From Euprymna scolopes (lineage: Eukaryota): DNA of 64,000 nucleotides. Location of the stretch: NCBI GenBank assembly GCA_053919585.1, contig CM132803.1; one strand, 5' to 3'. The position numbers were made by a program, and so were the translations under genes. The notes beneath the pieces are model-generated. The model was given only the letters and a program-made list of their open reading frames with translations. It had not been told where the DNA came from and did not search any database. Positions 1 to 62,890 of the stretch are shown here, piece after piece; within the stretch, counting starts at the first letter, position 1, and the number at the start of each line of letters is the position of its first letter.

Positions 1-710
1 TTTATTTGATAAGAAATGAAATTATTTTCATTTACATTTATTACTGAAAATTCATTTAGATAATTAATATTAAAATTAATTTTGTAAAATTATATTTTAT
101 AAAATATATTTTTACAATTAATTTTAATTCCTATATATTATATTTCTGTTAATTTATTTAAACAAGAATGTAATCTTGATCAAAACTTTATTTATATTCC
201 CTTATGTTATATTTTTAAAGTGACAGTGCTTAGAAAGTCTAAATGTACAGAAAAACGTATACTTTTTATTTAGAAAATTAAAAATAATATAGTTTTAATT
301 AAAAGGTTAGTAAATTAATATTTTTTACTAAGAACTTGAATTTTAATTTTTCAAATTTAATTTAACTATTATATAGTTTATAGAGAGAAAGAAACGAAAA
401 TAAAACTGTCTCGTTTTTCTTTGTTAGATAGTGTGGAAGTGTAAGAGCCTATTGAAGCAGTAATAGAAAGAAGAAAGCAGTCCTTGATAGAAGAGTAGCT
501 TCCATGGATATTAGTGTTCTGGGTGGTTTTTGATATTTAATTAACAATCACATTTTTTTTTACATGTATATGCGTTTCTATTATTTTTATGAATTTTCTA
601 TTTATTTATTTTATGAAATTATTTTAGTTATCAGTATTTAAAAAATGTTATATAACTGTTTCGTAGTATTCAATAAGAAATAACTGGCCTATCACAAAAA
701 AAAACATATA

Positions 711-850: not shown

Positions 851-1077
851 GTAAGTTAAAATTTTATTTATGTTCTATAATAAAGAATGCAAACGGCATG
901 CAGATATAAAACATGATCGACCATTGTTATATCAACAAATTTGTTTTATAATAACTAGAACAGCACTTTTTTATCTTTGATAAATTATTCTGAAATATTA
1001 TTCAAAATATTTTCCTATTTTTTCTTTAAATTATTTTTTTTTACAATAGATGAAATAAAATATCAAAAAACAAAATA

Positions 1078-1122
<45 letters not shown>

Positions 1123-1626
1123 CAAATCTCAGTAATATTTCAATATCGTTTGTGCATCCATGTTAAGAATCTTTGTTCATAAATTCTAATACCATGTTGA
1201 TATTGACAATTATATTGTAGACTGACAGATATTTACAATTTTTCCTAGTGTATTATTCATTTGTTTTTTAATCATTTAAAATTAATATTTTAAAAAAAGT
1301 CTAAAATAATTTATTTTTTATTTATAAAATAAATAAAAATTTAGATAGAGTAATTTATTTTTATTGATATTTGCAAGGTAGTATTTGGTATTTAGAAAAA
1401 AATTGACCTGGCTAAATACATTACATGTCTGAGGTTGTTAGTTAAGAATTTTCAGACACACATTTATATATGCATGTATATAATCAAATTTTGCAGCTAG
1501 AAGTCTTTGGTAATATTATCTGCATAGAATGTTTATTTTTGTAGTATTATCAGTCATACTAACATTTTATGACTTATAGTTTCTCAGATGCATAACACTG
1601 TACATGTTTTGTTTTTTTAATTTAAG

Positions 1627-4026
1627 ATGCTGAAGATGTTTCTGAAAACTTGCATTAACTTCTACATCTTACACCTTTGTGTGTGTATGGATCTCACTTA
1701 CTATGTGGAAGAAGGGAAAAGTCCAGGTACTTACCTGGGAGATGTTGCTACTGACTCTCTTGTCTTGAAGGACATATCACCTCAAGATGCTCATCAAATT
1801 AGTTTTGGTCTTTTGCAAAAAGGTGCCACTGGCAGTTCACCATTATTCCGAATCTCTGAGAAATCTAGCAAACTCTACACTGCCCAAACATTAGATGCTG
1901 AATCACTTTGCCTTTTCAATAAAGAATGCTTTCAAATGGTTGACGTAGCAGTGAGGAAAGGAACCACTGTTTTCAAATTGTTAGAAATCAAAGTTATCAT
2001 TAAAGATATCAATGATCATCAACCAGAATTCCTTGAAAAACAAGCAACTCTTAAGTTTAGTGAAGATGACCGAAAAGGGGCCAGAAGATCAATTCCAAAT
2101 GCGATTGACAAAGATGTTGGAATTATTAATTCTAAAATAACCTATGAGCTTATAAAACATAGTCAACAATCTTTTTCTTTGTTTGTATCTAAAAGTGTTG
2201 ATGGTGAATCAAAATTGAGTATAATTTTAGAAAAACCTCTTGATAGAGAAGTAAAAGACTCTTATATGCTTCAAGTGATTGCAAAAGATGGAGGTTCTCC
2301 ACCTAAAGAAAGTGTTTTAAATGTTGACGTTATTGTCACAGATGTTAATGACAATATTCCTGTTTTCTCACAGAAGGTTTACAATGTCTCAATTCAACAT
2401 AATCATGAAGAAATTAAACCTGTTACTGTATTGTCTGCTACAGATTTGGATTCTGGAATTAATGGCCGAATATATTACCATACAAATATGAAAACAAATG
2501 AAATGACAAGAAATGCTTTTAAATTAAATGAACAAACAGGTGAAATATTTCTAAATAATAAAGTTACTTTAAGAAAAGATTTGATTTATGAATTGTATGT
2601 TGAAGCTTCAGATGGGGGGAAACCTCCCTTGAGTGCATTGGCAAAAGTTTTCATAAATGTGATAAATGAACAAAATAATGCCCCAATTATTGATGTAAAT
2701 TTTTTCTCAACATCAAAGGAAAACACAGTTGATGTTTCTGAAAATATAAAAGTTGGTAGTTTCATTGCTTATGTGAAAGTAAGTGATGAGGATGCTGGTC
2801 AGAATGGAGAGGTGAACTGTGAAATAAAACATGATAAATTTCAATTGCAAAACATGGGAACCAAGAAATACCAAGTTATAGTGAAAACTCTTTTAGACAG
2901 GGAAACTGAAGATCATCACAGTATAATTATCAAATGTCAAGACAAAGGATCTCCTCCTCTTCAAAGCAAAAGGACATTTTCTGTACATGTGATTGATGTT
3001 AATGATGTAGAACCAGTGTTTTCTAAACAATTATTTAAATTCTTCATTGATGAAAACCAAAGATCGAAAATTCCTATTGGCACAATCAATGCCACAGATC
3101 CAGACTTGGGACTTGGAGGTAAACTGTCTTTTTCTTTAGTGAGCACCAATAAACAATTTGTACCATTTCGAATCACTGAAAATGGATTAATCTCTTCAAT
3201 TATGTCTTTAGACCATGAGTTTCAAGATACTTATAATTTTGAAGTGTTTGTAAAAGACAAAGGAAGTCCATCATTGAATAACACAGTGAATGTGATTGTT
3301 AAGGTGAGAGATGAAAATGATAATGCTCCATATTTCACATTTCCCAGTGTTAATCCTTATAATATGGATGTAACATATTACCCGCATCATACAAAGAACA
3401 TCAGCCAGATAAAGGCATCAGACAGTGACAGTCAAGAGAATGCATTTCTAAAATATGAAATAATCAGAGGCAATAGCAAACAGATATTCAGCATCAACCA
3501 GTACACTGGTTTGTTATGTTCAACTCATGTCCTAAGCCAACAAGATGCTGGCTCATATGAGCTGGAGTTTCTAGTGAAGGACAGTGGTAGCCCAGTTCTA
3601 TCAGCCAGAACTACTGTATATTTGACACTGACCGTAAGCAACAAGACATCAGAAATGTTAAATGCTGTTAACATCAAAAAAGATAACAAGATCCACCTGA
3701 CTTCAGCAATTATCATTGTGTCTGTAGCAGTGACAATAGCTGTGATCATTACAGCTTCAATCTCAGTGTGTATCCTTCGCTGTTGCAATCCTCGAAGCGT
3801 TCCAGTAGCAGAAGGTGGATATGTGAGTAGTGGTCAGAGACATTTAATAAGTCCTCCTTACCCAGCCAATCCTTGGTCTAATGTTGCTCTTCCTACAAGT
3901 GATGCAGTTGATATGAGAAGAAGCAGTCAACCACCAACACCCAGAATGCAAACCCATCCTTACGCTCAACAGATGTTACCATCACAAGCATCAAAATCAC
4001 AAGCACCTGCAGACTCTGTTTCACAG
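1627..4026 (+). CDS. Protocadherin gene 1, large exon (signal peptide, EC1-EC6, TM, proximal cytoplasmic tail)
   Basis: Cadherin motifs DINDHQP, LDRE, DVNDN, AxDxDxG, DxGxP; hydrophobic TM AIIIVSVAVTIAVIITASISVCIL; phase-0 donor CAG|GTGAGT. Spliced product ~950 aa. Confidence 0.95.
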
Positions 4027-4152: not shown

Positions 4153-4315
4153 ATGTATATTCAAGATGTGGCATTGCCATCTGGTAGTGACAGAAGTCAG
4201 AAAAAAGTTGGCAGAATGCAAAACTATTCTAGTAGAAATTCTATAAAATCTTCACATAATGATGACAGACAACGTTGGAATGATAGAAACCCAGGACTAA
4301 TTGAAGGCATGACAG
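4153..4315 (+). CDS. Protocadherin gene 1, cytoplasmic exon A (MYIQDVALPSG...)
   Basis: TTTAG acceptor, ACAG|GTGAG donor, 163 nt open in frame, homologous exon in all paralogs. Not in the ORF track. Confidence 0.9.
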
Positions 4316-8048: not shown

Positions 8049-8590
8049 GAAATATACATGGTCGAATTTTTATTCATATTTCTTCCTTTGGTTATATAAC
8101 AGTTTATATATTATATATACATGATTATTATAATTTTTAAAAGAATGATTTAATTTGAAATTTTTAATATATTTATCAGCATTGATTAATATTTTTCAAT
8201 CATAATCTTTTTTTGTACGTTTGCTTTAAACTGTTGTAACTAAATATTTCTGATTTGACCTCAACATTTTTATGTCAATAATATATATATTATCAATTCA
8301 GAATTAAAAATGTTTTTTTGAAAAGTTGTGTCATTTTTTGGAAACGTTGTTATTCTTAAGTTTTTCAAAGATGAATGAATAAGTATTAGTTTTCTTGTGT
8401 ATGACACTGTGATCAATTTAAAATTAAATTATTTGTTAGCAAGAAATATACCTGAATATCACCTTTTTCAAATAAGTCTCACCATGTTGTCAGAAACTGT
8501 ATGACTTTAGTAGATATTGATAATATTAAGTAAGTTTTAAAATTGATGTTTCCCAACATGAAATTAATGATGCTGCTACTTTTTTTTCAG

Positions 8591-8880
8591 ATATATACCC
8601 TGCCCAATATTGTAATCCTCCTCCTTCACAAATTAATCAACGCCATACAACAGAGACAAGACCCTTAGGACAGACTGTCAGCTACCCCAGTGATACAACA
8701 ATAGTAGCAAGAGGTTTCTACACACCCTACATGAATGAAAACAGTCCTCATGCAGATGCAAAGTCTGACTCTGGTGGTGAAAACAATAGTTTATCTAGTA
8801 GACAGTTACAATCAAGAAATATATCTGCAAGTGGTAGCCAGTCTTCAATCAACAGACCACTACCACCTGTACCATGCTAA
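8591..8880 (+). CDS. Protocadherin gene 1, terminal cytoplasmic exon B (DIYPAQYCNPPP...RPLPPVPC*)
   Basis: Poly-T CAG acceptor, phase 1, open to TAA at 8878-8880, homologous in all paralogs. Not in the ORF track. Confidence 0.9.
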
Positions 8881-9904: not shown

Positions 9905-10328
9905 GTAAGTTGTTTTTATCTAAGTTTACTATTTTTATTTGTACTAGTAAAAAAACAGAAACTCATCCTATAAAAATTAATTGTGTGATATTTATCATCA
10001 GTTATAATGTATAGAAAATGTATAGTCTATATTAATTTAATCAAAATAACTATTTTGTATATACATTTTGAATGATGTTTACTATTCAATCAGCATTCTG
10101 TTGGGTAAAAATTGTATTTTTTAATGTTTTTATTTCTGTTGATTAATATTTTAAACTTGTATTCTACCTGTAATCGGTACATCTTAAATTTTTAACCCCA
10201 CTTTTTAACATGATTTTCCTTGATTTTCGTTAAGACTTTAAATTAAAATACTTGAATGTTTGTGTATCTAGAATTACTTTCTATCTATTCATTCGAATAT
10301 GACATTTTTTGTTTTGATATCCAATTTT

Positions 10329-10393
<65 letters not shown>

Positions 10394-10675
10394 TATTATC
10401 ATCGTTTTACATAAATCTTTATTAAATTTATGATAATTTTTGTAAATTAAGCTATTTAATAATTTTAATATTTACAATTAATATAATATTGATAAATAAA
10501 TCATTAATAATTTCACTCAGCTTACTAGTAGTTGTTATTGAAAATATAGGACTATAATTTATATTGTTTCATATGTGTTATTGATAAATTATTTTATCTT
10601 AAAAAAATGTATGTATATTTTAATCTTTTTATTATACTATGAAAAATTATAAAATATTTCTATGAATTTATTATG

Positions 10676-10874: not shown

Positions 10875-13268
10875 ATGTTAACTGCATTTACTTTGATCTT
10901 CCTATTGCATTTGTCTGAGTGCATAGACCTCATATATTATGTTGAGGAAGGGAAGAGTCCTGGCACCTATTTAGGAGATATAGGTATTGATTCGGAAGTG
11001 ATGAAAGACACAGCTCCAGAAGAAAAGAAGAAAATTACTTTTAGTCTACTGCAACAAGGCTTCACTGGTACGTCTCCAATGTTTAGAATTTCAGAAAAAT
11101 CAGGAAAACTCTACACAGCTCAAACTCTAGATGCTGAGACTATTTGTACTTTTAAAAAAGAATGTTTTAAAATGGTTGACATTGCTGTTCAAAAAGCAAC
11201 AACTGTTTTTAAATTGTTAGAAGTGAAAGTGATTATACAAGACATTAATGATCATCAACCTGAATTTCCAGATAAACAAGTTAATATTGAATTTGAAGAA
11301 AATGATGTTCCTGGAACAAAGATATTAATTCCAAATGCAATAGATAGAGATGTTGGCATTCTCAATTCTCAAATAACCTACCACTTAAAAAGAAACAAAG
11401 ACGAACCTTTTTCATTATCAGTTGCAAAAAACGTGGATGGTACATCAAGATTGGATATAAATTTAGAAAGTCAACTTGACAGAGAAGTAAAGGACTCCTA
11501 CAAGATTCAGGTGATTGCAAAAGATGGTGGATCTCCCCCAAAACAAAGTACATTAGATGTTCTTATTACAGTGACAGATGTCAATGATAATGCTCCAATC
11601 TTTACTCAAAATGTTTATAATGTTACTGTTAACAACATGGTTGATACTAATAAAGCTGTGGCAACATTATCGGCAAAAGATTTGGATTCAGGTAAAAATG
11701 GAATGATTTCATATTATTTTAGTAGTAAAACTTCAGATATTGGCAAAAACATTTTTTCAATTAATGAAGATTCTGGAGAAATATTTTTCAATAAAAAGAT
11801 AGAATTCATGCAGCAATCAACATATGAACTATATGTTAAAGCCGAAGATAAAGGTGACCCTCCACTCAGTTCTATTGTAATGGTTGTAGTAAATTTGATT
11901 AATCAGCAGAATAATCCTCCAAGTATTAAAGTAAATTTTGTTTCAACATCAAAGGACAACACAGTTGATATTTCTGAAGACATAAAAGTTGGTAGTTTCA
12001 TTGCATACGTGAAAGTAATTGATACGGATATTGGCAATGATGGAGAGGTTAGTTGTTATCTTTCACATAAAAAATTTCAGCTTCGCAATATGGGCACACA
12101 GAAATATCAAGTTATAGTAAAAGATTATTTAGACAGAGAGAGGAATGACCATCATGATATTATCATCGATTGTAAAGATAAAGGAAATCCTCCATTGAAA
12201 AGTAGAAGTAAATTTTCAGTCCAAGTGATGGATGTGAATGATGAACAGCCACAATTTTCTAAACAATTATTTAAATTCTTCATTGATGAAAACCAGAGAT
12301 CAAAAATTCCTATTGGCACAATCAATGCCACAGATCCAGACTTGGGACTTGGAGGTAAACTGTCTTTTTCTTTAGTGAGCACCAATAAACAATTTGTACC
12401 ATTTCGAATCACTGAAAATGGATTAATCTCTTCAATTATGTCTTTAGACCATGAGTTTCAAGATACTTATAATTTTGAAGTGTTTGTAAAAGACAAAGGA
12501 AGTCCATCATTGAATAACACAGTGAATGTGATTGTTAAGGTGAGAGATGAAAATGATAATGCTCCATATTTCACATTTCCCAGTGTTAATCCTTATAATA
12601 TGGATGTAACATATTACCCGCATCATACAAAGAACATCAGCCAGATAAAGGCATCAGACAGTGACAGTCAAGAGAATGCATTTCTAAAATATGAAATAAT
12701 CAGAGGCAATAGCAAACAGATATTCAGCATCAACCAGTACACTGGTTTGTTATGTTCAACTCATGTCCTAAGCCAACAAGATGCTGGCTCATATGAGCTG
12801 GAGTTTCTAGTGAAGGACAGTGGTAGCCCAGTTCTATCAGCCAGAACTACTGTATATTTGACACTGACCGTAAGCAACAAGACATCAGAAATGTTAAATG
12901 CTGTTAACATCAAAAAAGATAACAAGATCCACCTGACTTCAGCAATTATCATTGTGTCTGTAGCAGTGACAATAGCTGTGATCATTACAGCTTCAATCTC
13001 AGTGTGTATCCTTCGCTGTTGCAATCCTCGAAGTGTTCCAGTAGCAGAAGGTGGATATGTGAGTAGTGGCCAGAGACATTTAATAAGTCCTCCTTACCCA
13101 GCAAATCCTTGGTCTAATGTTGCTCTTCCTACAAGTGATGCAGTTGATATAAGACGAAACAGTCAACCACCAACACCCAGAATGCAAACCCATCCTTACT
13201 CAAGCAATCAGCAAATGCTGTCATCTCAAGCACCAAAATCACAGCCACCACCAGACTCTGTTTCACAG
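10875..13268 (+). CDS. Protocadherin gene 2, large exon
   Basis: Six EC repeats plus TM; acceptor TTTCAG at 10796; ATG 10875 gives a signal peptide like the paralogs (in-frame ATG at 10818 is an alternative); donor CAG|GTAAGT. Confidence 0.93.
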
Positions 13269-17274: not shown

Positions 17275-17431
17275 ATGTATATTCAAGACATTGCATTACC
17301 ATCAGGTACTGATAGAACCAAGAAAATAAGTGCCAAGGAATATTCCAGCCGGGGTTCCTTAAAATCATCTCATAAGGATAACAGACAAGTTTGGAATGAA
17401 CGAGATGCAAGGCAGACAGAAGACATGGCAG
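17275..17431 (+). CDS. Protocadherin gene 2, cytoplasmic exon A
   Basis: ACAG|ATGTATATTCAAGAC, donor GCAG|GTAAT, 157 nt, phase 0/1. Confidence 0.9.
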
Positions 17432-18213: not shown

Positions 18214-18503
18214 ATATATATCCTTCACAATATTGCAATCCTCCTCCATCACACGATGACCATCAGCGATCAACAGAGATACGGTCTTTGGGACAAACTG
18301 TCAGTTATCCCAGTGATACCACAATAGTAGCCAGAGGCTTTTATACCCCTTACATGAATGAACATAGCCCACACACAGAAACAAAGGCTTTCTCAAGTGC
18401 TGAAAATAGAAGCTCTTCCAGTAGACTTTCACAATCAAGAAATGTGCCTACAAGTGGAAGCCAGTCTTCCATCAACAGACCATTGCCTCCTGTACCTCAT
18501 TAA
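18214..18503 (+). CDS. Protocadherin gene 2, terminal exon B
   Basis: CAG acceptor; DIYPSQYCNPPP...RPLPPVPH*. Confidence 0.9.
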
Positions 18504-20190: not shown

Positions 20191-22581
20191 ATGATAGTCA
20201 AAATTTGTATCATTTTATCTTTTGTAAATATTTGTTTGTGTGTGGACCTCACTTACTATGTGGAAGAAGGAAAAAATTCTGGTAATTACCTGGGAGATGT
20301 TGCTGCTGACTCTCTTGTGATGAAGGACATATCATCTCAAAATTATCACCAAATTAGTTTTAGTCTTTTACAAAAAGGTGCAACTGGCAGTTCACCATTA
20401 TTCCGAATTTCTGAAAAATCTGGCAAACTGTACACTGCCCAAACATTAGATGCTGAATCACTTTGCTTTTTCAATAAGGAATGCTTTCAGATGGTTGATG
20501 TGGCAGTCAGGAAAGAAACAGCTGTTTTCAAATTGTTAGAAATTAAAGTCATCATTAAAGATATCAATGATCATCAGCCTGAATTTCCTGAGAAAAAGGT
20601 TGACATAAAATTTGATGAAGGCTACAAAAAAGATGCCAAAGTATTAATACCTAGTGCTTTTGACAAAGATGTTGGGATTATTAATTCTAAGATAACATAC
20701 GAGCTTGAAAAACAAAGCAATGAACCTTTTTCTTTGTTTGTATCTAAAAGTGTTGATGGTTCTTTAAGATTGAGTATCAATTTAGAAGGCCCTCTTGACA
20801 GAGAAATCAAAGATAATTACATGATCAAAGTCATTGCTAAAGATGGAGGCTTACCAACAAAACAAAGTGCTTTAAATGTTCACATCACAGTAACAGATGA
20901 TAATGATAATTTCCCAATTTTCTCACAGAAAGTTTACAATGTCTCAATCCAACATAATCATGAAGAAGTAAAACCTGTTACTGTATTGTCTGCTACAGAT
21001 TTGGATTTGGGAAAAAATGGAAAAATTTTATATCACATCAGTGTGAAAACAAATGAAATGACAAGAAATGCCTTTAAATTGAATGAAAAAACTGGAGAAA
21101 TATTCCTTAAAAAGAAAATCACTTTGAGAAAAGATATAATGTATGAATTATATGTTGAAGCATCGGATGAAGGTAGTCCACCATTAAGTTCATTATCAAT
21201 GGTTTTAATAAATGTGATAAATGAACAAAATAATGCTCCAATTATTGATGTAAACTTCTTCTCAACATCAAAGGAAAATACAGTTGATGTTTCTGAAAAT
21301 ATAAAAGTTGGTAGTTTCATTGCTTATGTGAAAGTAAATGATGAGGATGCTGGTCAGAATGGAGAGGTGAACTGTGAAATAAAACATGATAAATTTCAAT
21401 TGCAAAACATGGGAACCAAGAAATACCAAGTGATAGTGAAAACTCTTTTAGACAGGGAAACTGAAGATCATCACAGTATAATTATCAAATGTCAAGACAA
21501 AGGATCTCCTCCTCTTCAAAGCAAAAGGACATTTTCTGTACATGTGATTGATGTTAATGATGTAGAACCAGTGTTTTCTAAACAATTATTTAAATTCTTC
21601 ATTGATGAAAACCAGAGATCGAAAATTCCTATTGGCACAATCAATGCCACAGATCCAGACTTGGGACTTGGAGGTAAACTGTCTTTTTCTTTAGTGAGCA
21701 CCAATAAACAATTTGTACCATTTCGAATCACTGAAAATGGATTAATCTCTTCAATTATGTCTTTAGACCATGAGTTTCAAGATACTTATAATTTTGAAGT
21801 GTTTGTAAAAGACAAAGGAAGTCCATCATTGAATAACACTGTGAATGTGATTATTAAGGTGAGAGATGAAAATGATAATGCTCCATATTTCACATTTCCC
21901 AGTGTTAATCCTTATAATATGGATGTAACATATTACCCGCATCATACAAAGAACATCAGCCAGATAAAGGCATCAGACAGTGACAGTCAAGAGAATGCAT
22001 TTCTAAAATATGAAATAATCAGAGGCAATAGCAAACAGATATTCAGCATCAATCAGTACACTGGTTTGTTATGTTCAACTCATGTCCTAAGCCAACAAGA
22101 TGCTGGCTCATATGAGCTGGAGTTTCTAGTGAAGGACAGTGGTAGTCCAGTTCTATCAGCGAGAACTACTGTATATTTGACACTGACCGTAAGCAACAAG
22201 ACATCAGACATGTTAAATGCTGTTAACATCAAAAAAGATAACAAGATCCACCTGACTTCAGCAATTATCATTGTGTCTGTAGCAGTGACAATAGCTGTGA
22301 TCATTACAGCTTCAATCTCAGTGTGTATTCTTCGCTGTTGCAATCCTCGAAGTGTTCCAGTAGCAGAAGGCGGATATGTGAGTAGTGGTCAGAGACATTT
22401 AATAAGTCCTCCTTACCCAGCAAATCCTTGGTCTAATGTTGCTCTTCCTACAAATGATGCAGTTGATATGAGAAGAAGCAGTCAACCACCAACACCCAGA
22501 ATGCAAACACATCCTTACGCTCAACAAATGTTACCATCTCAAGCCTCAAAACTACAACCGCCTGCAGACTCTGTTTCACAG
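20191..22581 (+). CDS. Protocadherin gene 3, large exon
   Basis: Signal peptide, six EC repeats, TM; donor CAG|GTAAGT. Confidence 0.95.
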
Positions 22582-22814: not shown

Positions 22815-22974
22815 ATGTATATTCAAGATGTGGCATTGCCATCTGGTGTTGACAGGAATCAGAAAAAAAATGGCAGAATGCAAAACTATTCCAATAAAAA
22901 TTCTATAAAATCTCACAATAATGACAGACAAGATTGGAATGATAGAAACACAAGACCATTAGAAGGGATAACAG
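22815..22974 (+). CDS. Protocadherin gene 3, cytoplasmic exon A
   Basis: TTTAG|ATGTATATTCAAG, donor ACAG|GTGAGT, 160 nt. Confidence 0.9.
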
Positions 22975-31190: not shown

Positions 31191-31332
31191 NNNNNNNNNN
31201 NNNNNNNNNNNNNNNNNNNNNNNNNNNNNNNNNNNNNNNNNNNNNNNNNNNNNNNNNNNNNNNNNNNNNNNNNNNNNNNNNNNNNNNNNNNNNNNNNNNN
31301 NNNNNNNNNNNNNNNNNNNNNNNNNNNNNNNN
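31191..31332. other. Assembly gap (142 N)
   Basis: Run of N within gene 3 intron 3. Confidence 1.
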
Positions 31333-31445
31333 GTCCACTTTTCCATTTTACTTTTTCTACATAATCTTTATTACATAAGAATTGACATGTTCTCAGGTAT
31401 AAAATTAATAATGTTGTAACGATTTTTATTTATTTATTTTTTTAG

Positions 31446-31735
31446 ATATATACCCTTCCCAATATTGTAATCCACCTCCTTCACAAATTGATCAACGTCG
31501 TACAACAGAGACAAGACCCTTAGGACAGACTGTCAGCTACCCCAGTGATACAACAATAGTAGCAAGAGGTTTCTACACATCCTACATGAATGAAAACAGT
31601 CCTCATGCAGATGCAAAGTCTGACTCTGGTGGTGAAAACAATAGTCTATCTAGTAGACAGTTACAATCAAGAAATATATCTGCAAGTGGTAGCCAGTCCT
31701 CAATCAATCGACCACTTCCTGCATTACCTCATTAG
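31446..31735 (+). CDS. Protocadherin gene 3, terminal exon B
   Basis: TTTAG acceptor; DIYPSQYCNPPP...RPLPALPH* (TAG 31733-31735). Linkage to gene 3 crosses the N gap. Not in the ORF track. Confidence 0.85.
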
Positions 31736-32565
31736 AAAAATTCCTCCTTAAAAACTATTTTACCAGTTATTATATAATTAAATTTTCATAAAGAGGGCCT
31801 GTGGATTTGTTTTTGAAATCTCTTATTTAAGAAAGTACATTTAAATCAAACCAGTTGAATTGAATTTATTTTCCAACCTATATTTGGCTTCAAATTTTTT
31901 TAAATTAAAATAGTATAAAAAATATTTTATACTTTTATAATATATATATATATGCATCCATACATATAATTAGCTATATATGTATGTTTGTGTTGTGTAA
32001 ACTTCCAAACAAATTAACTAGTCATTATGAATTTATAATAACAGCTGTTAAGTGCAATGGGGAATAATGTGGGCTATATTTAGTTTGATATAGTTTTATT
32101 CACGCCAGTCATGGTAGGTAATAGCTCTTCATAAAAATTCAGGTACCTCTGATTTAAATGAAATTTTAATCATACATATTAAACATCAATTAATAAGTAT
32201 TCCCCAAATTGCAGTTTCTGCAGAATATTTTAAAGTAATAGTAATTATAATATGGGAACAACCTCGCATTTCAAAATTCAAATGATTCCAATTTGCTTTA
32301 AAATTTGATTGATATCTATGAAACACCAACTAAGCAAGATTTTCCTGATTTCCAAATCCTAAATTTTAGATATTTTCTATAATCAAAACATCATTTTATG
32401 GATTTTGATCAAAATTGGAATAAGGAATTTAGACATAAGGTTCAGTAGCATATATATCTTGATTTTAATCTTTATAATGGAACATAAAAGTTGTACAAAT
32501 CAGTTGTTTTCTGCATTAATTTTATTAACACTCATAATATTTGTCCAAAAACAAGTATTCTGCTA

Positions 32566-33961: not shown

Positions 33962-36361
33962 ATGATGCTTCCCCAAATATTTGTTGTTTTCTATCTATTA
34001 AAGATTTGCTTATGTGTTGATCTCACTTACAATGTGGAAGAAGGCAAAAGTCCAAATACATATGTGGGAGACATTGCTGCAGATTCGCATGTCATGAATG
34101 ATATTTCAACTGAAGATCATAACTTGATTAGTTTTGGTCTCTTACAAAAAGGTGCTTCTGGCTCATCTCCATTGTTCAAGATCTCCAAAAAGTCTGGGAA
34201 ATTATACACAGCTCAAACTTTAGATGCTGAATCACTTTGTTTTTTTAAAAAACAGTGTTTTCAGATGGTAGATGTGGCTGTTAGAAAAGCAACAACCGTG
34301 TTCAAATTATTAGAAATCAAAATAATTATAAATGATATAAATGACCATCAGCCAGAGTTTTCTGATAAACTCATCAAAGTTGACTTTGAAGAAAATGATA
34401 GTAAGGGAACAAAAAAATCAATTCCGAATGCAATTGACAAGGATGTTGGTATTGTTGATTCTCAGATTACTTATGAATTAAAAAAAGAGAAAGAGGAACC
34501 TTTTTCTTTGTTTGTATCTAAAAGTGTTGATGGAACATCAAAGCTAAATTTAGTATTAGAAAAATCTCTTGATCGTGAAGTGAAAGACTCTTATATGATT
34601 CAAGTGATTGCCAAAGATGGTGGTTCTCCACCTAAACAAAGTTCTTTAAATGTTCACATCACAGTCACAGACGTCAATGACAATATACCTATATTCACGC
34701 AGAAAATATACAATGTTTCCATACATCATGATCACGAAGACATAAAACCTGTTACGGTATTATCTGCCACAGATTTAGACGCTGGAATTAATGGCCGAAT
34801 ATATTACCATACAAATATGAAAACAAATGAAATGACGAGAAATGCCTTTAAATTAAATGAACAAACAGGTGAAATATTTTTGAATAAGAAAGTTGCTTTA
34901 AGAAAAGATTTGGTTTATGAGTTGTATGTTGAAGCTTCAGATGGGGGGAAACCTCCCTTGAGTGCATTGGCAAAAGTTTTAATAAATGTGATAAATGAAC
35001 AAAATAATGCTCCAATTATTGATGTAAACTTCTTCTCAACATCAAAGGAAAATACTGTTGATGTTTCTGAAAATATAAAAGTTGGTAGTTTCATTGCTTA
35101 TGTGAAAGTAAGTGATGAGGATGCTGGTCAAAATGGAGAGGTGAACTGTGAAATAAAACATGATAAATTTCAATTGCAAAACATGGGAACCAAGAAATAC
35201 CAAGTGATAGTGAAAACTCTTTTAGACAGGGAAACTGAAGATCATCACAGTATAATTATCAAATGTCAAGACAAAGGATCTCCTCCTCTTCAAAGCAAAA
35301 GGACATTTTCTGTACATGTGATTGATGTTAATGATGTAGAACCAGTGTTTTCTAAACAATTATTTAAATTCTTCATTGATGAAAACCAGAGATCGAAAAT
35401 TCCTATTGGCACAATCAATGCCACAGATCCAGACTTGGGACTTGGAGGTAAACTGTCTTTTTCTTTAGTGAGCACCAATAAACAATTTGTACCATTTCGA
35501 ATCACTGAAAATGGATTAATCTCTTCAATTATGTCTTTAGACCATGAGTTTCAAGATACTTATAATTTTGAAGTGTTTGTAAAAGACAAAGGAAGTCCAT
35601 CATTGAATAACACAGTGAATGTGATTGTTAAGGTGAGAGATGAAAATGATAATGCTCCATATTTCACATTTCCCAGTGTTAATCCTTATAATATGGATGT
35701 AACATATTACCCGCATCATACAAAGAACATCAGCCAGATAAAGGCATCAGACAGTGACAGTCAAGAGAATGCATTTCTAAAATATGAAATAATCAGAGGC
35801 AATAGCAAACAGATATTCAGCATCAACCAGTACACTGGTTTGTTATGTTCAACTCATGTCCTAAGCCAACAAGATGCTGGCTCATATGAGCTGGAGTTTC
35901 TAGTGAAGGACAGTGGTAGTCCAGTTCTATCAGCCAGAACTACTGTATATTTGACACTGACCGTAAGCAACAAGACATCAGAAATGCTAAATGCTGTTAA
36001 CATCAAAAAAGATAACAAGATCCACCTGACTTCAGCAATTATCATTGTGTCTGTAGCAGTGACAATAGCTGTGATCATTACAGCTTCAATCTCAGTGTGT
36101 ATCCTTCGCTGTTGCAATCCTCGAAGTGTTCCAGTAGCAGAAGGCGGATATGTGAGTAGTGGTCAGAGACATTTGATAAGTCCTCCTTACCCAGCCAATC
36201 CTTGGTCTAATGTTGCTCTTCCTACAAGTGATGCAGTTGATATGAGAAGAAGCAGTCAACCACCAACACCAAGAATGCAAACCCATCCTTACTCAAGTGC
36301 TCACCATATGCTCTCCCCTCAAGCACAAAAACCAGAACAAACTTCAGACTCTGTTTCACAG
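33962..36361 (+). CDS. Protocadherin gene 4, large exon
   Basis: Acceptor TTTCAG at 33921, first in-frame ATG 33962, six EC repeats plus TM, donor CAG|GTAAGT. Confidence 0.94.
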
Positions 36362-36717: not shown

Positions 36718-36880
36718 TTATATATCCAAGATGTTTCATTGCCACCTGGTATTGATAAAAATAAGAAAAGGATGAAGAAGTCACAGGATTATTCCACTAG
36801 AAGTTCTATTAAATCATCTCACAATGATGACAAACAAGAATGGAATGATATTGATACAAGACATAATGAGATCATGACAG
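36718..36880 (+). CDS. Protocadherin gene 4, cytoplasmic exon A (LYIQDVSLPPG...)
   Basis: ATAG acceptor, donor ACAG|GTGAGT, 163 nt. Confidence 0.88.
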
Positions 36881-42577: not shown

Positions 42578-44992
42578 ATGTTTCCTCTAAAGAAGCTGCT
42601 GAAAAATATATGCATAATATTTATTATCATACACATCGGATTGTGCATAGATATTACTTACTATGTTGAAGAAGGAAGACAACCAGGTACATATGTAGGT
42701 GATGTTGCAAATGATTCACAAATGATGAAGGATATCCCGGATTCTGACCACAATCGAATTGAATTTAAGCTTCTTCATAAAGGAGCTACTGGCAATTCCC
42801 CAATATTTAAAATATCAAAAAGAACTGGAAAACTATACACTGCACAAACATTAGATGCAGAATCACTTTGTCATTTTGAAAAAGAATGTTTTCAAACGAT
42901 AAATATAGCAGTTAAAAAATCAACAACTGTTTTCAAGTTATTAGAAATCAAAGTAATAATACAGGACATAAATGATCATCAGCCAGAGTTTCCGGATAAA
43001 CAAATTACTATAGAATTTGAAGAAGGAAATGGTAAAGGTATGAAAAGATCAATTCCAAATGCCATAGACAAAGATGTAGGAATCACTAATTCACAAATTA
43101 CTTATGAACTAAAAAAGACCAAAGATGAACCTTTCATATTATCTACAATGAAAAAAGTTGATGGAACATCTGATCTAAGTATAGAATTAGAAAGAATGTT
43201 AAACAGAGAAAACAAGGATTCTTATACAATTGAAGTAATTGCAAAAGATGGAGGATCCCCACCAAAACAAAGTGTATTGACTGTTCACATTTCAATCACA
43301 GATGTAAATGATAATAAACCAATATTTTCTAAAAAGGTTTATAATGTTTCTATTGACAGCAAACACAATGAAGCCAAACCAGTTGTCATATTATCTGCTA
43401 AAGATTTAGATTCTGGAGAAAATGGCAAAGTAAAATATCATATTACGGCAAAAACAACTGAAAGCACAAGAAAGATATTTGATTTAAATGAAATTACTGG
43501 AGAATTATTTCTACATAAAAAAGACATATTAAATAAAAAAGTGATATATAAGTTATATGTGGAAGCTAGAGATGGGGGTAATCCACCTCTACGATCATTA
43601 GCAATGGTTTTTGTAAATGTTATTAACCAGCAAAATAAAGCTCCATTAATAGACGTAAACTTTTTCTCTACATCCAGAGAAAACACAGTTGATATTTCTG
43701 AGGACATAAAAGTTGGTAGTTTCATTGCTTATGTAAAAGTAAGTGATGAGGATGCTGGTCAGAATGGAGAGGTGAACTGTGAAATAAAACATGATAAATT
43801 TCAGCTTCAGAAGATGGGAATCCTTAAATATCAAGTAATTGTAAAAAGTCATTTAGATCGTGAAAGAGAAGAACAACATGATATTATAATAATGTGTCAA
43901 GACAAAGGATCTCCTCCATTAAAAACTAAAAGCAAGTTCTCAGTTCAAGTGTTGGATGTTAACGATGTAGAACCAGTGTTTTCTAAACAATTATTTAAAT
44001 TCTTCATTGATGAAAACCAGAGATCGAAAATTCCTATTGGCACAATCAATGCCACAGATCCAGACTTGGGACTTGGAGGTAAACTGTCTTTTTCTTTAGT
44101 GAGCACCAATAAACAATTTGTACCATTTCGAATCACTGAAAATGGATTAATCTCTTCAATTATGTCTTTAGACCATGAGTTTCAAGATACTTATAATTTT
44201 GAAGTGTTTGTAAAAGACAAAGGAAGTCCATCATTGAATAACACAGTGAATGTGATTGTTAAGGTGAGAGATGAAAATGATAATGCTCCATATTTCACAT
44301 TTCCCAGTGTTAATCCTTATAATATGGATGTAACATATTACCCGCATCATACAAAGAACATCAGCCAGATAAAGGCATCAGACAGTGACAGTCAAGAGAA
44401 TGCATTTCTAAAATATGAAATAATCAGAGGCAATAGCAAACAGATATTCAGCATCAACCAGTACACTGGTTTGTTATGTTCAACTCATGTCCTAAGCCAA
44501 CAAGATGCTGGCTCATATGAGCTGGAGTTTCTAGTGAAGGACAGTGGTAGCCCAGTTCTATCAGCCAGAACTACTGTATATTTGACATTGACCATAAGCA
44601 ACAAGACATCAGAAATGCTAAATGCTGTTAACATAAAAAAAGATAACAAGATCCACCTGACTTCAGCAATTATCATTGTGTCTGTAGCAGTGACAATAGC
44701 TGTGATCATTACAGCTTCAATCTCAGTGTGTATCCTTCGCTGTTGCAATCCTCGAAGTGTTCCAGTAGCAGAAGGCGGATATGTGAGTAGTGGTCAGAGA
44801 CATTTGATAAGTCCTCCTTACCCAGCCAATCCTTGGTCTAATGTTGCTCTTCCTACAAGTGATGCAGTTGATATGAGAAGAAGCAATCAACCACCAACAC
44901 CCAGAATGCAAACCCATCCTTACTCAAGTGCTCAACAAATGCTGTCATCACAAGCATCAAAGCCACAACCTATTCACGATTCTGTATCTCAA
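42578..44992 (+). CDS. Protocadherin gene 5, large exon
   Basis: Acceptor TTTCAG at 42547, six EC repeats plus TM, donor CAA|GTAAGT. Confidence 0.94.
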
Positions 44993-45924: not shown

Positions 45925-45976
<52 letters not shown>

Positions 45977-52044: not shown

Positions 52045-54441
52045 ATGTGGGCATCAGCATTTATTTTAATTTCAATTGGACATTTATGTTTTTGTGTGGA
52101 CCTTACATATCATATAGAAGAAGGGAAAAGCCCTGGTACTTATATTGGAGACATTTCTTCCGATTCTCAAGTGATAAAAGACATTTCAACTGAAGATAAA
52201 AAATCTATTCAGTTCAATCTTCTATTACAAGCTGAAACTGGTATATCTCCATTATTTGATATCTCAAAGAAATCAGGAAAACTGTACACATCCCAAACTT
52301 TGGATGCTGAATCAATGTGTATTTTCAAAAAAGAATGTTTTCAAATGATTGATGTTGCTATTCAAAAGGGAACAACTGTTATTACATTATTAGAAGTCAA
52401 AGTCATCATTCAAGATATCAATGACCATCAACCTGAGTTTCCTGATAAAATTGTCAATATAGAATTTTCTGAAGATGATAGTAAAGGAGTTAAACGATCT
52501 ATACCTCATGCTGTAGATCATGATGTATCATCAATAAATTCACAAATAACTTATCAGCTGAATAAGGAACAAAATGAACCATTTTCATTATCTGTCTCCA
52601 AAAATCTTGACGGCACATCTAAATTAGTTATTAATCTTGAAAAAAGACTTGATAGAGAAACTAAAAACTCGTACGAAATTCAAGTAATTGCTAAAGATAG
52701 TGGTTCACCACCAAAACAAAGCATTTTAGATGTTCACGTTTCTGTTATTGATGTCAATGATAATCCACCAATCTTCTCCCAGAATATTTATAATGTTTCT
52801 ATTCAAAATATACATGACAAAACAAAACCAGTTGCCATTATTTCAGCTACAGATTTAGATTCAGGTAAAAACAGTAAAATCCAGTATCATTACAGCACAA
52901 AAACTTTGGATTTTGCAAAACAGTTATTCCAACTAAATGAAGAGAATGGTGAAATTCTTTTGAATAAGAATCCAACTTTAGGACAACAATCAACTTACGA
53001 GTTGTATGTTCAAGCGAAAGATGGAGGAAATCCTTCTTTAAGTTCTATTGCTATAGTCCACATCAATGTGATCAACCAAGAAAATAATCCACCAAAAATA
53101 AAAGTGACTTTTGTCTCCACATCATGGGACAATACAGTGGAGATTTCTGAAAACATCAAAGTAGGAAGTTTCATTGCTTATGTGAAAGTGAGCGACCAAG
53201 ATGAAGGACAGAATGGGGAAGTAAAATGTGAACTAAACCATGATAAATTTCAGCTTCGTATTATGGACAAGCAAAAATATCAAGTAATTGTAAAAAGTAT
53301 ATTAGACAGAGAAAAAGAGGAACAACATGACATCATCATCATTTGTAAAGATAAAGGATCTCCTCCTTTGAAAAGTAAAAGCAGATTCTCAATTAAAGTG
53401 ACAGATTTCAATGATGTACAACCACAATTTTCTAAACAGTCATTTGAATTCTTCATTGATGAAAACCAAAGATCGAAAATTCCTATTGGCACAATCAATG
53501 CCACAGATCCAGACTTGGGACTTGGAGGTAAACTGTCTTTTTCTTTAGTGAGCACCAATAAACAATTTGTACCATTTCGAATCACTGAAAATGGATTAAT
53601 CTCTTCAATTATGTCTTTAGATCATGAGTTTCAAGATACTTATAATTTTGAAGTGTTTGTAAAAGACAAAGGAAGTCCATCATTGAATAACACAGTGAAT
53701 GTGATTGTTAAGGTGAGAGATGAAAATGATAATGCTCCATATTTCACATTTCCCAGTGTTAATCCTTATAATATGGATGTAACATATTACCCGCATCATA
53801 CAAAGAACATCAGCCAGATAAAGGCATCAGACAGTGACAGTCAAGAGAATGCATTTCTAAAATATGAAATAATCAGAGGCAATAGCAAACAGATATTCAG
53901 CATCAACCAGTACACTGGTTTGTTATGTTCAACTCATGTCCTAAGCCAACAAGATGCTGGCTCATATGAGCTGGAGTTTCTAGTGAAGGACAGTGGTAGC
54001 CCAGTTCTATCAGCCAGAACAACTGTATATTTAACACTGACCGTAAGCAACAAGACATCAGAAATGTTAAATGCTGTTAACATCAAAAAAGATAACAAGA
54101 TCCACCTGACTTCAGCAATTATCATTGTGTCTGTAGCAGTGACAATAGCTGTGATCATTACAGCTTCAATCTCAGTGTGTATCCTTCGCTGTTGCAATCC
54201 TCGAAGTGTTCCAGTAGCAGAAGGCGGATATGTGAGTAGTGGTCAGAGACATTTGATAAGTCCTCCTTATCCAGCCAATCCTTGGTCTAATGTTGCTCTT
54301 CCTACAAGTGATGCAGTTGATATGAGAAGAAGCAGTCAACCACCAACACCCAGAATGCAAACCCATCCTTACTCAAGTGCTCAACAAATGCTGTCTTCTC
54401 AAACATCAAAATCACAACCTACCCCACATTCTGTATCTCAG
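52045..54441 (+). CDS. Protocadherin gene 6, large exon
   Basis: Acceptor TTTCAG at 51975, first in-frame ATG 52045, six EC repeats plus TM, donor CAG|GTAAAT. Confidence 0.94.
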
Positions 54442-59966: not shown

Positions 59967-62363
59967 ATGCTGAAGATTATAGGTTTAATATGTATAATGA
60001 TACATATTGGACTCTGCATAGATAAAACTTACCATGTGGAAGAGGGACGACAACCAGGTACTTATGTGGGTGATGTTGCAAGTGATTCACAAGTGATGAA
60101 GGATATTCCTGATTCTGACCACAGCCTCATTGAATTCAGTCTTCTTCATAAAGGAGCTACTGGCAATTCCCCATTATTTAAAATATCAAAAAGAACTGGA
60201 AAACTTTACACTGCACAAACATTAGATGCAGAATCACTTTGTCATTTTGAAAAGGAATGTTTTCAAATGGTGAATATAGCAGTAAGGAAATCAACAACTG
60301 TTTTCAAGCTATTAGAAATCAAAGTAATAATACAAGACATCAATGATCATCAGCCAGAGTTTCCGGATAAACAAGTTAATGTGAAATTGGATGAAAATGT
60401 ATTAATTGGCACAAAAGTTTCAATTCCAAATGCTATAGACAAAGACATAGGTATTATTAATTCACAAATTACTTATGAACTAAAGAAGACAAAAGATGAT
60501 CCATTCATATTGTCTACAATGAAGAAAGTTGATGGAACATCTGATCTGAGTATAGAATCAGAAGGACTACTCAACAGGGAGATCAAAGAAACTTATTCAG
60601 TTCAAGTAATTGCAAAAGATGGAGGATCCCCACCAAAACAAAGTGCATTAACTGTTCACATTTCAATCACAGATGTAAATGATAATACACCATTATTTTC
60701 TAAAAAGGTTTATAATGTTTCTATTGACAGCAAACACAATGAAGCCAAACCAGTTGTCATATTATCTGCTAAAGATTTAGATTCTGGAGAAAATGGCAAA
60801 GTAAAATATCATATTACGGCTAAAACAACTGAAAGCACAAGAAAGATATTCGACTTAAATGAAATTACTGGAGAATTATTTCTACATAAGAAAGATACAA
60901 TAAATAAGGAAATGATATACAATTTGTATGTAGAAGCAAAAGATGGTGGGAATCCACCTCTACGATCATTAGCAAAGGTTATTGTAATGATGATGAACCA
61001 GCAGAATAAAGCTCCATTAATAGATGTAAACTTTTTCTCTACATCCAGAGAAAACACAGTTGATATTTCTGAGGACATAAAAGTTGGTAGTTTCATTGCT
61101 TATGTGAAAGTAAGTGATGAGGATGCTGGTCAGAATGGAGAGGTGAACTGTGAAATTAAACATGATAAATTTCAGCTTCAGAAGATGGGAATCCTTAAAT
61201 ATCAAGTAATTGTAAAAAGTCCTTTAGATCGTGAAAGAGAAGAGCATCATGATATTATCATCATGTGTCAAGATAAAGGATCTCCTCCTTTGAAAAGTAA
61301 AAGCAAGTTCTCTGTTAAAGTGATGGATGTTAACGATGTAGAACCAGTGTTTTCTAAACAATTATTTAAATTCTTCATTGATGAAAACCAGAGATCAAAA
61401 ATTCCTATTGGCACAATCAATGCCACAGATCCAGACTTGGGACTTGGAGGTAAACTGTCTTTTTCTTTAGTGAGCACCAATAAACAATTTGTACCATTTC
61501 GAATCACTGAAAATGGATTAATCTCTTCAATTATGTCTTTAGACCATGAGTTTCAAGATACTTATAATTTTGAAGTGTTTGTAAAAGACAAAGGAAGTCC
61601 ATCATTGAATAACACAGTGAATGTGATTGTTAAGGTGAGAGATGAAAATGATAATGCTCCATATTTCACATTTCCCAGTGTTAATCCTTATAATATGGAT
61701 GTAACATATTACCCGCATCATACAAAGAATATCAGCCAGATAAAGGCATCAGACAGTGACAGTCAAGAGAATGCATTTCTAAAATATGAAATAATCAGAG
61801 GCAATAGCAAACAGATATTCAGCATCAACCAGTACACTGGTTTGTTATGTTCAACTCATGTCCTAAGCCAACAAGATGCTGGCTCATATGAGCTGGAGTT
61901 TCTAGTGAAGGACAGTGGTAGCCCAGTTCTATCAGCCAGAACTACTGTATATTTGACACTGACCGTAAGCAACAAGACATCAGAAATGTTAAATGCTGTT
62001 AACATCAAAAAAGATAACAAGATCCACCTGACTTCAGCAATTATCATTGTGTCTGTAGCAGTGACAATAGCTGTGATCATTACAGCTTCAATCTCAGTGT
62101 GTATCCTTCGCTGTTGCAATCCTCGAAGTGTTCCAGTAGCAGAAAGCGGATATGTGAGTAGTGGTCAGAGACATTTGATAAGTCCTCCTTACCCAGCAAA
62201 TCCTTGGTCTAATGTTGCTCTTCCTACAAGTGATGCAGTTGATATGAGAAGAAGCAGTCAACCACCAACACCCAGAATGCAAACCCATCCTTACTCAAGT
62301 GCTCAACAAATGCTGTCATCACAAACATCAAAGCCACAACCTATTCACGATTCTGCATCTCAA
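59967..62363 (+). CDS. Protocadherin gene 7, large exon
   Basis: Acceptor TTTCAG at 59921, first in-frame ATG 59967, six EC repeats plus TM, donor CAA|GTAAGT. Confidence 0.94.

Positions 62364-62834: not shown

Positions 62835-62890
<56 letters not shown>

What the first reader, a model, noticed from the sequence alone, without database searches (positions are those of the whole stretch)
3040..3963. An indel-free 924-bp EC5-EC6-TM-proximal tail block is homogenised in all seven paralogs: a constant region held inside separate genes
Seen: 3040-3963, 12276-13199, 21595-22518, 35369-36292, 44000-44923, 53449-54372 and 61371-62294 are collinear and nearly identical, including synonymous sites, with at most 3 amino-acid differences from consensus over 308 codons. 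EC1-EC3 just upstream in the same exon, and the exon end, introns and tail exons just downstream, have clearly diverged. Established: in vertebrate clustered Pcdhs EC1-EC4 set homophilic trans specificity, EC5-EC6 mediate promiscuous cis dimers, and the distal ectodomains show gene conversion. Inference: recurrent interlocus gene conversion keeps a universal cis-assembly/membrane module next to variable recognition domains. This would reproduce variable/constant logic convergently without shared exons.
Basis: partly seen in the sequence, partly recalled or inferred. Interest (0 to 1): 0.85.

Follow-up and report, generated by a model that had tools for sequence, protein, structure and literature searches.

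The report
Gene-converted constant block in cephalopod protocadherins
Seven neighbouring cell-adhesion (protocadherin) genes of a squid- or cuttlefish-type animal keep the 924 bases for their membrane-near part almost letter-identical by copying it between genes, while their outer recognition domains stay old and different; fish protocadherin clusters do the same, so this is an independent example, not a new mechanism.

Summary
The seven 924-bp stretches are collinear, indel-free and 98.3-99.4% identical. They lie in frame inside seven tandem, same-strand, six-EC protocadherin genes. The block covers EC5, EC6, the linker, the transmembrane helix and 62 cytoplasmic residues.

Synonymous divergence is 0.03-0.08 in the block, 1.3-1.5 in EC1-EC3, 0.7 in EC4, 0.8 in the last 21-23 codons of the same exon and 0.9 in each gene's own two tail exons.

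On EC1-EC4 each window gene pairs with a counterpart (83-87% aa) from an independent assembly. On the block all seven window genes form one clade (100/99), and AU tests reject the alternatives. So this is concerted evolution by interlocus gene conversion, not purifying selection or young duplication. An assembly artefact is unlikely, but it was excluded only indirectly because no reads could be laid.

The same pattern holds in seven other sub-arrays. Each has its own block version, so the block is constant per sub-array, not universal. Fugu and zebrafish protocadherin variable exons show the same pattern. Cephalopod papers mention conversion only in general terms. The cis-assembly function is untested.

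This scan already reported the same thing on neighbouring and distant DNA of this genome.

The parts
3040..3963 (+). Homogenised block, gene 1 (EC5-EC6-linker-TM-62 cytoplasmic residues)
12276..13199 (+). Homogenised block, gene 2
   Evidence: its 31-mers are held at 0.83-0.90 in more than 20 independent runs
21595..22518 (+). Homogenised block, gene 3 (the most private changes: 3 aa)
35369..36292 (+). Homogenised block, gene 4
   Evidence: RNA fold z-score -0.87
44000..44923 (+). Homogenised block, gene 5
53449..54372 (+). Homogenised block, gene 6
61371..62294 (+). Homogenised block, gene 7
1627..4026 (+). Gene 1 exon 1 (signal peptide, EC1-EC6, TM, juxtamembrane); donor CAG|GTGAGT. The start codon is the first ATG of the ORF and is not verified.
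10875..13268 (+). Gene 2 exon 1 (the ATG at 10875 just before the signal peptide is an inferred start); donor CAG|GTAAGT
20191..22581 (+). Gene 3 exon 1
33962..36361 (+). Gene 4 exon 1 (the ATG at 33962 is an inferred start)
42578..44992 (+). Gene 5 exon 1
52045..54441 (+). Gene 6 exon 1 (the ATG at 52045 is an inferred start)
59967..62363 (+). Gene 7 exon 1 (the ATG at 59967 is an inferred start)
4153..4315 (+). Gene 1 exon 2 (its own tail exon). Counterparts: g2 17275-17431, g3 22815-22974, g4 36718-36880, g5 45144-45306, g6 55324-55471, g7 62514-62676. Lengths are 148-163 nt and identity is 70-83%.
8591..8880 (+). Gene 1 exon 3 (its own last exon, with stop). Counterparts: g2 18214-18503, g3 31446-31735, g4 40434-40696, g5 49133-49401, g6 57814-58106. 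Lengths are 263-293 nt. dS over the tail exons is 0.91.

Best explanation
The window holds seven head-to-tail protocadherin genes of a decapodiform cephalopod. Each has three coding exons. Exon 1 encodes the signal peptide, six cadherin repeats, the membrane helix and the start of the tail. Exons 2 and 3 encode the gene's own tail. Non-reciprocal copying between paralogs (interlocus gene conversion) repeatedly overwrites the EC5-EC6-TM-juxtamembrane segment, so all copies in this sub-array carry one sequence version that evolves as a unit. Shown here: the segment's history is uncoupled from that of the rest of each gene. Inferred: conversion tracts that reach into EC1-EC4 are removed by selection for distinct recognition specificities. 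Once the flanks have diverged, the lack of homology itself stops tracts at the same edges, which explains the sharp common boundaries. Among closer paralogs (genes 1/3/4, 5/7) tracts still run on into EC4-EC3. The result is a variable head on a sub-array-wide constant stem without shared exons. Whether constancy is itself selected (for example for cis pairing, membrane delivery or cleavage) or merely tolerated is not settled.
For: Per-domain dS is: EC1 1.48, EC2 1.31, EC3 1.33, EC4 0.72, EC5 0.035, EC6 0.035, linker+TM 0.031, cytoplasmic part 0.083, exon end 0.80, tail exons 0.91. The converted patch is bounded on both sides within one exon, so it is not a crossover product. On the EC1-4 tree, window genes pair with genes of an independent ENA assembly: g2+P0006 100/100, g6+P0008/P0010 100/100, g4+P0002 96/99, g5+g7+P0004 100/100. 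On the block tree all seven window genes form one clade at 100/99. AU tests reject a window clade on EC1-4 (p 7e-6) and reject g2+P0006 on the block (p 6e-4). Each window gene has an EC1-4 partner at 83-87% aa, yet it is only 90.5-92.8% identical to that partner in the block, against 98-100% to its window paralogs. Of the 31 variable block sites, 24 are singletons, and 9 of 21 informative site pairs fail the four-gamete test. Block differences do not track physical distance or EC1-4 divergence (rho -0.05 and 0.11). Block dS (0.04) is below that of the youngest duplicate pair g5/g7 (EC1-4 dS 0.26). Extra pairwise tracts extend into EC3-EC4. The same profile appears in seven other contig groups. 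Block residues 4-197 align to EC5-EC6 of gammaB7 and gammaB4 structures.
Against: There is no clear GC-biased-conversion signal. GC3 is 0.31 in the block against 0.22 upstream, but fourfold-site GC is 0.23 against 0.18 and is not significant for a single gene (p 0.89); in fugu GC3 rises above 50%. The second genome was compared at protein level only, because its DNA could not be fetched, and its species is unknown. It could be a duplicated array of the same species, though that would not change the incongruence. No reads could be laid on the window, so per-copy confirmation of the block rests on indirect evidence. A polymorphic-site run test of the GENECONV type is uninformative for a tract shared by all copies.
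Confidence: 0.9

Rival explanations
1. Assembly or polishing artefact: the copies really differ, and the assembler or a short-read polisher imposed a consensus on the repeated part.
For: Identity in a 924-bp multi-copy segment is the kind of place where polishing can erase true differences. No reads could be laid on the window.
Against: Each copy keeps private substitutions and sits in frame between unique flanks. Polishing cannot turn dS of about 1.3 into 0.04. An independent assembly of another genome shows the same profile in eight groups of genes. More than 20 independent RNA and DNA runs from 2015-2025 hold 83-90% of the block's 31-mers.
Confidence: 0.03
2. Extreme purifying selection on the nucleotide sequence itself (RNA structure, dense A-to-I editing sites, an embedded element), without any exchange between genes.
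For: Cephalopod neural transcripts are heavily edited, and editing is known to constrain synonymous sites (general knowledge, not tested here).
Against: Selection alone would keep the block tree congruent with the EC1-4 tree. It is incongruent with full support, and the AU test rejects congruence. The block differs by 7-9% aa from its counterparts in the other genome while differing 0-2% among window paralogs. There is no Rfam family in the window, and the block RNA folds no better than shuffles (z -0.87).
Confidence: 0.03
3. The genes are young duplicates: the block shows their true recent ancestry, and EC1-EC4 diverged fast under positive selection. A variant is that repeated unequal crossovers alone homogenised the block.
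For: Unequal crossover and recent duplication do occur here. Units g5 and g7 are 93.8% identical over 4.1 kb, including an intron.
Against: Positive selection does not raise synonymous divergence. dS is 1.3-1.5 in EC1-3, 0.8 at the exon end just 3' of the block and 0.9 in the tail exons, and the introns are unalignable between most genes. A crossover would also homogenise everything on one side of its breakpoint, which is not seen. The paralog lineages predate the split from the second genome.
Confidence: 0.03

Closest known systems
Regional gene conversion in teleost clustered protocadherin variable exons (fugu Pcdh2 alpha/gamma subclusters, Yu et al. 2007, PMC1852091; zebrafish Pcdh2ab1-12, Noonan et al. 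2004 as tabulated in PMC4978886)
   Same: The 3' part of a large ectodomain exon is more than 99% identical in nucleotides among neighbouring paralogs. There is a discrete boundary in EC4 or EC5, and EC1-EC3 are 60-80% identical. The converted region is subcluster-specific and differs between subclusters. Zebrafish dS is 0.12 in EC5 and 0.01 in EC6, against 1.1-2.9 in EC1-4. Here dS is 0.035 in EC5 and in EC6, against 0.7-1.5.
   Different: This is an independent, lineage-specific expansion in a mollusc. The genes are complete and each has its own tail exons and stop codon, rather than being variable exons spliced to shared constant exons. The tract stops 63-69 nt before the exon end. No significant GC rise is seen at fourfold sites. 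The highest/lowest dS ratio is about 45, against 231 in zebrafish.
Vertebrate clustered protocadherin variable/constant organisation and EC5-EC6 cis dimerisation (review PMC7811963)
   Same: Six-EC architecture, one large exon for the ectodomain plus TM, and a tandem same-strand array. The recognition domains are diverse (EC2/EC3 most), next to a uniform membrane-proximal part. The block aligns to EC5-EC6 of gammaB7 5V5X and gammaB4 6E6B.
   Different: There are no shared constant exons. Cis dimerisation, homophilic trans binding and stochastic promoter choice are all untested in cephalopods. By sequence the block is about as close to CELSR1 and to delta-protocadherins as to gamma protocadherins.
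General remarks on gene conversion in cephalopod protocadherin arrays (Albertin et al. 2022, PMC9068888; Albertin 2015 as quoted in Styfhals 2019, PMC6339937)
   Same: [quoted passage not shown] Diversity arises by full gene duplication, not alternative splicing.
   Different: Those papers treat whole genes. I found no paper describing conversion restricted to EC5-EC6-TM, with boundaries, per-domain dS or per-domain trees, in cephalopods.

Membership tests
Protocadherin (six-EC single-pass cadherin-superfamily receptor) | Six extracellular cadherin repeats after a signal peptide | tested here: met
   Pfam finds Cadherin (5 stretches, E 5e-76) plus the N-terminal Cadherin_2 domain. Five inter-repeat linker motifs are visible in the alignment. 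All top homologues are protocadherins.
Protocadherin (six-EC single-pass cadherin-superfamily receptor) | Single transmembrane helix and cytoplasmic tail; ectodomain plus TM in one large exon | tested here: met
   A hydrophobic run follows EC6 inside the 2.4-kb exon 1. The canonical donor lies after the juxtamembrane part. The tail is on two small exons. The TM helix was read from the sequence and not predicted with a tool.
Interlocus (ectopic) gene conversion / concerted evolution | Near-identity that includes synonymous sites and is confined to a tract with diverged sequence on both sides | tested here: met
   dS is 0.03-0.08 in the tract, against 0.7-1.5 upstream and 0.8-0.9 downstream. The edges are shown.
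Interlocus (ectopic) gene conversion / concerted evolution | The tract groups by genome or array while the flanks group by orthologue | tested here: met
   Trees and AU tests; identity matrices.
Interlocus (ectopic) gene conversion / concerted evolution | Mosaic exchange (incompatible sites, variable tract ends between pairs) | tested here: met
   9 of 21 informative site pairs fail the four-gamete test. Pair-specific tracts run into EC3-EC4 for g1/g3/g4 and g5/g7.
Interlocus (ectopic) gene conversion / concerted evolution | GC enrichment at silent sites of the converted tract | tested here: inconclusive
   GC3 is 0.31 against 0.22, but fourfold-site GC is 0.23 against 0.18, and Fisher p is 0.89 for gene 4 alone.
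Vertebrate-type clustered Pcdh locus (variable exons + shared constant exons) | Variable exons spliced to constant exons shared by the cluster | tested here: not met
   Each gene has its own exons 2 and 3, with indels, dS of 0.91 and its own stop codon. Splicing was inferred from consensus sites and conservation, not from RNA reads.
Vertebrate-type clustered Pcdh locus (variable exons + shared constant exons) | EC5-EC6/EC6 cis dimer and EC1-EC4 homophilic trans dimer | not testable with these tools
   Only positional homology of the block to EC5-EC6 of solved gamma protocadherins was shown.
Vertebrate-type clustered Pcdh locus (variable exons + shared constant exons) | One promoter with a conserved element per isoform and stochastic choice | not tested
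It was not examined here.

The most novel reading that the evidence does not exclude
The homogenised block is not just tolerated but selected. On this reading, each cephalopod sub-array has its own shared EC5-EC6-TM-juxtamembrane module that lets all its isoforms pair sideways, traffic and signal interchangeably. Cephalopods would then have rebuilt, from stand-alone genes and by conversion alone, the variable-recognition/constant-assembly logic of vertebrate alpha/beta/gamma clusters, with sub-arrays playing the role of clusters. The recurrent EC2(-EC3) variability island in otherwise homogenised sub-arrays would mark the specificity determinants.
Probability: 0.3. Interest if true: 0.7.

Novelty: new member of a known kind. 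Interest (0 to 1): 0.42.

Why it matters
Cephalopods and vertebrates expanded protocadherins independently, alongside their large brains. This result shows that the cephalopod arrays converge not only in number but also in internal evolutionary logic: diverse EC1-EC4, with EC2/EC3 most diverse, on a stem kept uniform by conversion. That gives concrete, testable predictions. Specificity should lie in EC1-EC4, and promiscuous cis pairing or shared processing should lie in the block, per sub-array.

There is also a practical consequence. Whole-gene trees of cephalopod protocadherins are distorted by the converted third of the exon, so orthology should be inferred from EC1-EC3 only, as is done for teleosts.

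The mechanism itself is well known, and this scan has now met the same feature four times in this genome.

Tried and rejected
- **Read laying.** There is therefore no read-level depth, variant or splice evidence.
- **DNA of the best foreign contig.** It could not be fetched because the sample file is too large, so orthologue comparisons are protein-only. Cluster look-up gave no species name.
- **Second run search.** I hoped to compare between-species retention of block words against EC1-4 words. In the two organism-C RNA runs, all of the gene-2 words they hold lie in the block (0.69 of block words equals 0.24 of exon words). A multi-copy segment is simply better assembled in small libraries, and the relatedness of the coded organisms is unknown, so the test is inconclusive.
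- **GENECONV-style longest-run permutation.** It detects the pairwise EC3-EC4 tracts. It is blind to a tract shared by all copies, because that tract has few polymorphic sites.
- **GC-biased conversion signature.** The GC3 difference does not hold up at fourfold sites.
- **Structured RNA or a known RNA family as a cause of silent-site conservation.** There is no Rfam hit and the fold z-score is -0.87.
- **Papers not held.** Noonan 2004 and Albertin 2015 are not in the library and are cited only through papers that quote them.

Full report
**Observation**

They are 98.3-99.4% identical pairwise and open in one frame only. They lie inside seven + strand ORFs of 807-853 aa, spaced about 9 kb apart. 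Pfam reads these ORFs as cadherin-repeat proteins with the protocadherin-type N-terminal domain.

The protein alignment shows six repeats, a membrane helix and a short cytoplasmic stretch in one exon. A database search finds thousands of cephalopod protocadherins. The named hits are from the cuttlefish Acanthosepion pharaonis at about 60% identity, so the source is a decapodiform cephalopod.

The block has 31 variable sites, 22 of them synonymous, and no copy has more than three amino-acid changes from consensus. Only 31 of the 780 variable sites of exon 1 fall in the block, where 308 are expected (p 3e-121). Third codon positions vary at 7% of block sites and at 80% of sites elsewhere.

**Anatomy**

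The block starts in the EC4-EC5 linker. All seven genes become identical within about 30 nt of each other there. It runs through EC5, EC6, the extracellular linker, the membrane helix and 62 cytoplasmic residues.

It ends right after a THPY motif, where a 6-nt indel and dense substitutions begin. That point is 63-69 nt before a canonical CAG|GTAAGT donor. Residues 4-197 of the block align to the fifth and sixth repeats of solved gamma-protocadherin ectodomains: 5V5X residues 223-425 and 6E6B residues 430-632.

Each gene continues with its own exon 2 (148-163 nt) and exon 3 (263-293 nt, ending in its own stop codon). These were found by conservation and splice consensus. No constant exons are shared.

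**Rates**

Nei-Gojobori estimates by domain are as follows:

| Region | dS | dN |
|---|---|---|
| EC1 | 1.48 | 0.13-0.27 across EC1-EC4 |
| EC2 | 1.31 | |
| EC3 | 1.33 | |
| EC4 | 0.72 | |
| EC5 | 0.035 | 0.001-0.01 across the block |
| EC6 | 0.035 | |
| Linker + TM | 0.031 | |
| Cytoplasmic part of the block | 0.083 | |
| Last 21-23 codons of exon 1 | 0.80 | |
| Tail exons | 0.91 | |

**The orthologue test**

The best database hits (P0001-P0019 and cluster mates P0121-P0127) come from contigs of one independent ENA assembly. Its DNA could not be fetched and its species is not given.

On EC1-EC4 every window gene has a partner there at 83-87% amino-acid identity, against 62-71% to most window paralogs. 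In the block each window gene is only 90.5-92.8% identical to that same partner, but 98-100% identical to the other window genes.

Maximum-likelihood trees make this formal:
- On EC1-EC4 the two sets interleave: g2+P0006 100/100, g6+P0008/P0010 100/100, g4+P0002 96/99, g5+g7+P0004 100/100.
- On the block the seven window genes form one clade at 100/99.
- AU tests reject a window-only clade on EC1-EC4 (p 7e-6) and reject g2+P0006 on the block (p 6e-4).

The incongruence holds whether the foreign set is another species, which the uniform partner divergence suggests, or a duplicated array of the same species.

**Signs that the exchange is repeated rather than single**
- 24 of the 31 variable sites are singletons, and 9 of 21 pairs of informative sites fail the four-gamete test.
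- Block differences correlate neither with distance along the array nor with EC1-EC4 divergence.
- Block dS is far below that of the youngest duplicate pair, g5/g7 (0.26).
- Closer paralogs share longer tracts. Genes 1, 3 and 4 are 97-100% identical from about codon 366-386 of the alignment onward. Gene 1 switches from gene-3-like to gene-4-like in EC3. Genes 1 and 5 share a 98% patch at the start of EC4.
- The foreign array has its own, somewhat less uniform version of the block (93-97% aa), so both lineages homogenised independently.

**Generality**

I grouped the foreign proteins by contig. Eight groups, counting the window, show the same profile: EC5, EC6 and TM are mostly 94-100% identical, EC2/EC3 are lowest at 52-80%, and the exon end is variable. 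The least uniform group (255849) shows only 74-86% in EC5, EC6 and TM.

The block versions differ between groups. They are 83-85% identical between two gene sets on the same contig and about 62% identical to more distant arrays. The block is therefore constant per sub-array, not universal.

In several groups EC2 alone stays at about 70% while EC1, EC3 and EC4 are 87-98%. That pattern looks like a protected specificity island.

**Rivals**
- **Assembly or polishing artefact.** This cannot create a 30-fold dS contrast with private variants and in-frame unique flanks. The pattern recurs in an independent assembly, and more than 20 independent RNA and DNA runs hold 83-90% of the block's 31-mers.
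- **Nucleotide-level purifying selection.** This is contradicted by the tree incongruence. The window has no Rfam family, and the block RNA folds no better than shuffled sequence (z -0.87).
- **Young duplicates with fast-evolving heads, or crossovers alone.** This does not fit the high synonymous divergence on both sides of the block or the unalignable introns.
- **GC-biased conversion.** The signal reported for fugu is not clearly present here. GC3 is 0.31 against 0.22, but fourfold-site GC is 0.23 against 0.18 and not significant.

**Mechanism**

Shown: the EC5-EC6-TM segment evolves in concert across the sub-array while the rest of each gene keeps its own old lineage.

Inferred:
- Conversion tracts start anywhere in the homologous exon.
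- Tracts that overwrite EC1-EC4 are removed because they destroy distinct binding specificities.
- The diverged flanks then block heteroduplex extension, which sharpens and fixes the edges.

Untested: whether uniformity of the stem is itself selected. In vertebrates EC5-EC6/EC6 mediates promiscuous cis dimers and EC1-EC4 mediates strict trans recognition (PMC7811963). In cephalopods that remains an analogy. By sequence the block is about as close to CELSR1 and delta-protocadherins as to gamma protocadherins.

**Comparison with the literature**

Yu et al. 2007 (PMC1852091) describe the same thing in fugu. The 3' regions of variable exons are more than 99% identical among neighbouring paralogs. 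A discrete boundary lies in EC4 or EC5, and 5' regions are 60-80% identical. The converted regions are specific to each subcluster.

Etlioglu et al. 2016 (PMC4978886) tabulate zebrafish dS as 0.12 in EC5 and 0.01 in EC6, against 1.1-2.9 elsewhere.

For cephalopods I found only general statements. Albertin et al. 2022 write of 'homogenization through gene conversion' (PMC9068888). Styfhals et al. [quoted passage not shown] Five further literature searches found no domain-resolved description (papers checked).

The finding is thus a new, independently evolved member of a known kind. It differs in that the genes are complete, with private tail exons, and in that the tract stops short of the exon end.

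**Earlier notes of this scan**

Other windows of the same genome carry the same feature. These are s1-295510 (944 bp, just upstream), s1-259181 (956 bp, just downstream) and s1-244837 (1296 bp including EC4, 48 Mb away). Their follow-ups reached the same reading. My tests were run independently on this window and agree. Relative to the short summaries shown to me, the orthologue-level tree test and the survey of sub-arrays appear to be additions.

**Verdict**

The gene-conversion reading is supported with high confidence. The functional reading is open. Novelty and interest are moderate.

Noticed in passing
window 2363-3040 and the matching parts of genes 3 and 4: EC3-EC4 are mosaics. Gene 1 is gene-3-like in EC1-EC2 and gene-4-like through EC3 (92-98% from about alignment codon 306). 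Genes 1, 3 and 4 share one EC4 (97-100%). Genes 1 and 5 share a 98% patch at the start of EC4. These look like pair-specific conversion tracts longer than the common block.
   Followed up: partly
window 42581-46670 vs 59952-64000: The units of genes 5 and 7 are 93.8% identical over 4.1 kb without a break, from the start codon through exon 1, intron 1 and exon 2 into intron 2, while the upstream regions are unrelated. This is a young segmental duplicate whose 5' breakpoint sits at the start of the coding sequence.
   Followed up: partly
proteins P0015-P0018 and the contig groups 259853, 161988 and 52831: In several foreign sub-arrays EC2 alone (or EC2-EC3) stays at about 70% identity while EC1, EC3 and EC4 are 87-98% and EC5-TM is about 99%. 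This is a hypervariable island like the EC2-EC3 specificity region of vertebrate clustered protocadherins.
   Followed up: no
window 8582-8864 vs 31437-31719: The last exons of genes 1 and 3 are 95.8% identical, although their exon 2 is only 83% identical and the other tails are 73-78%. This may be a separate small conversion tract or a remnant of duplication.
   Followed up: no
window 1050-1145, 10308-10402, 31903-32001, 45458-45524, 45905-45976, 62812-62902: A dispersed repeat of about 65-75 nt (77-88% identical) occurs in both orientations in the intergenic or upstream regions of several genes. It has no Rfam match.
   Followed up: no
window 69-128: A 60-nt near-perfect palindrome (90% self-complementary) near the window start.
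   Followed up: no
window 31191-31332: A run of 142 N in the long second intron of gene 3, just upstream of its last exon. I left it as it is.
   Followed up: no
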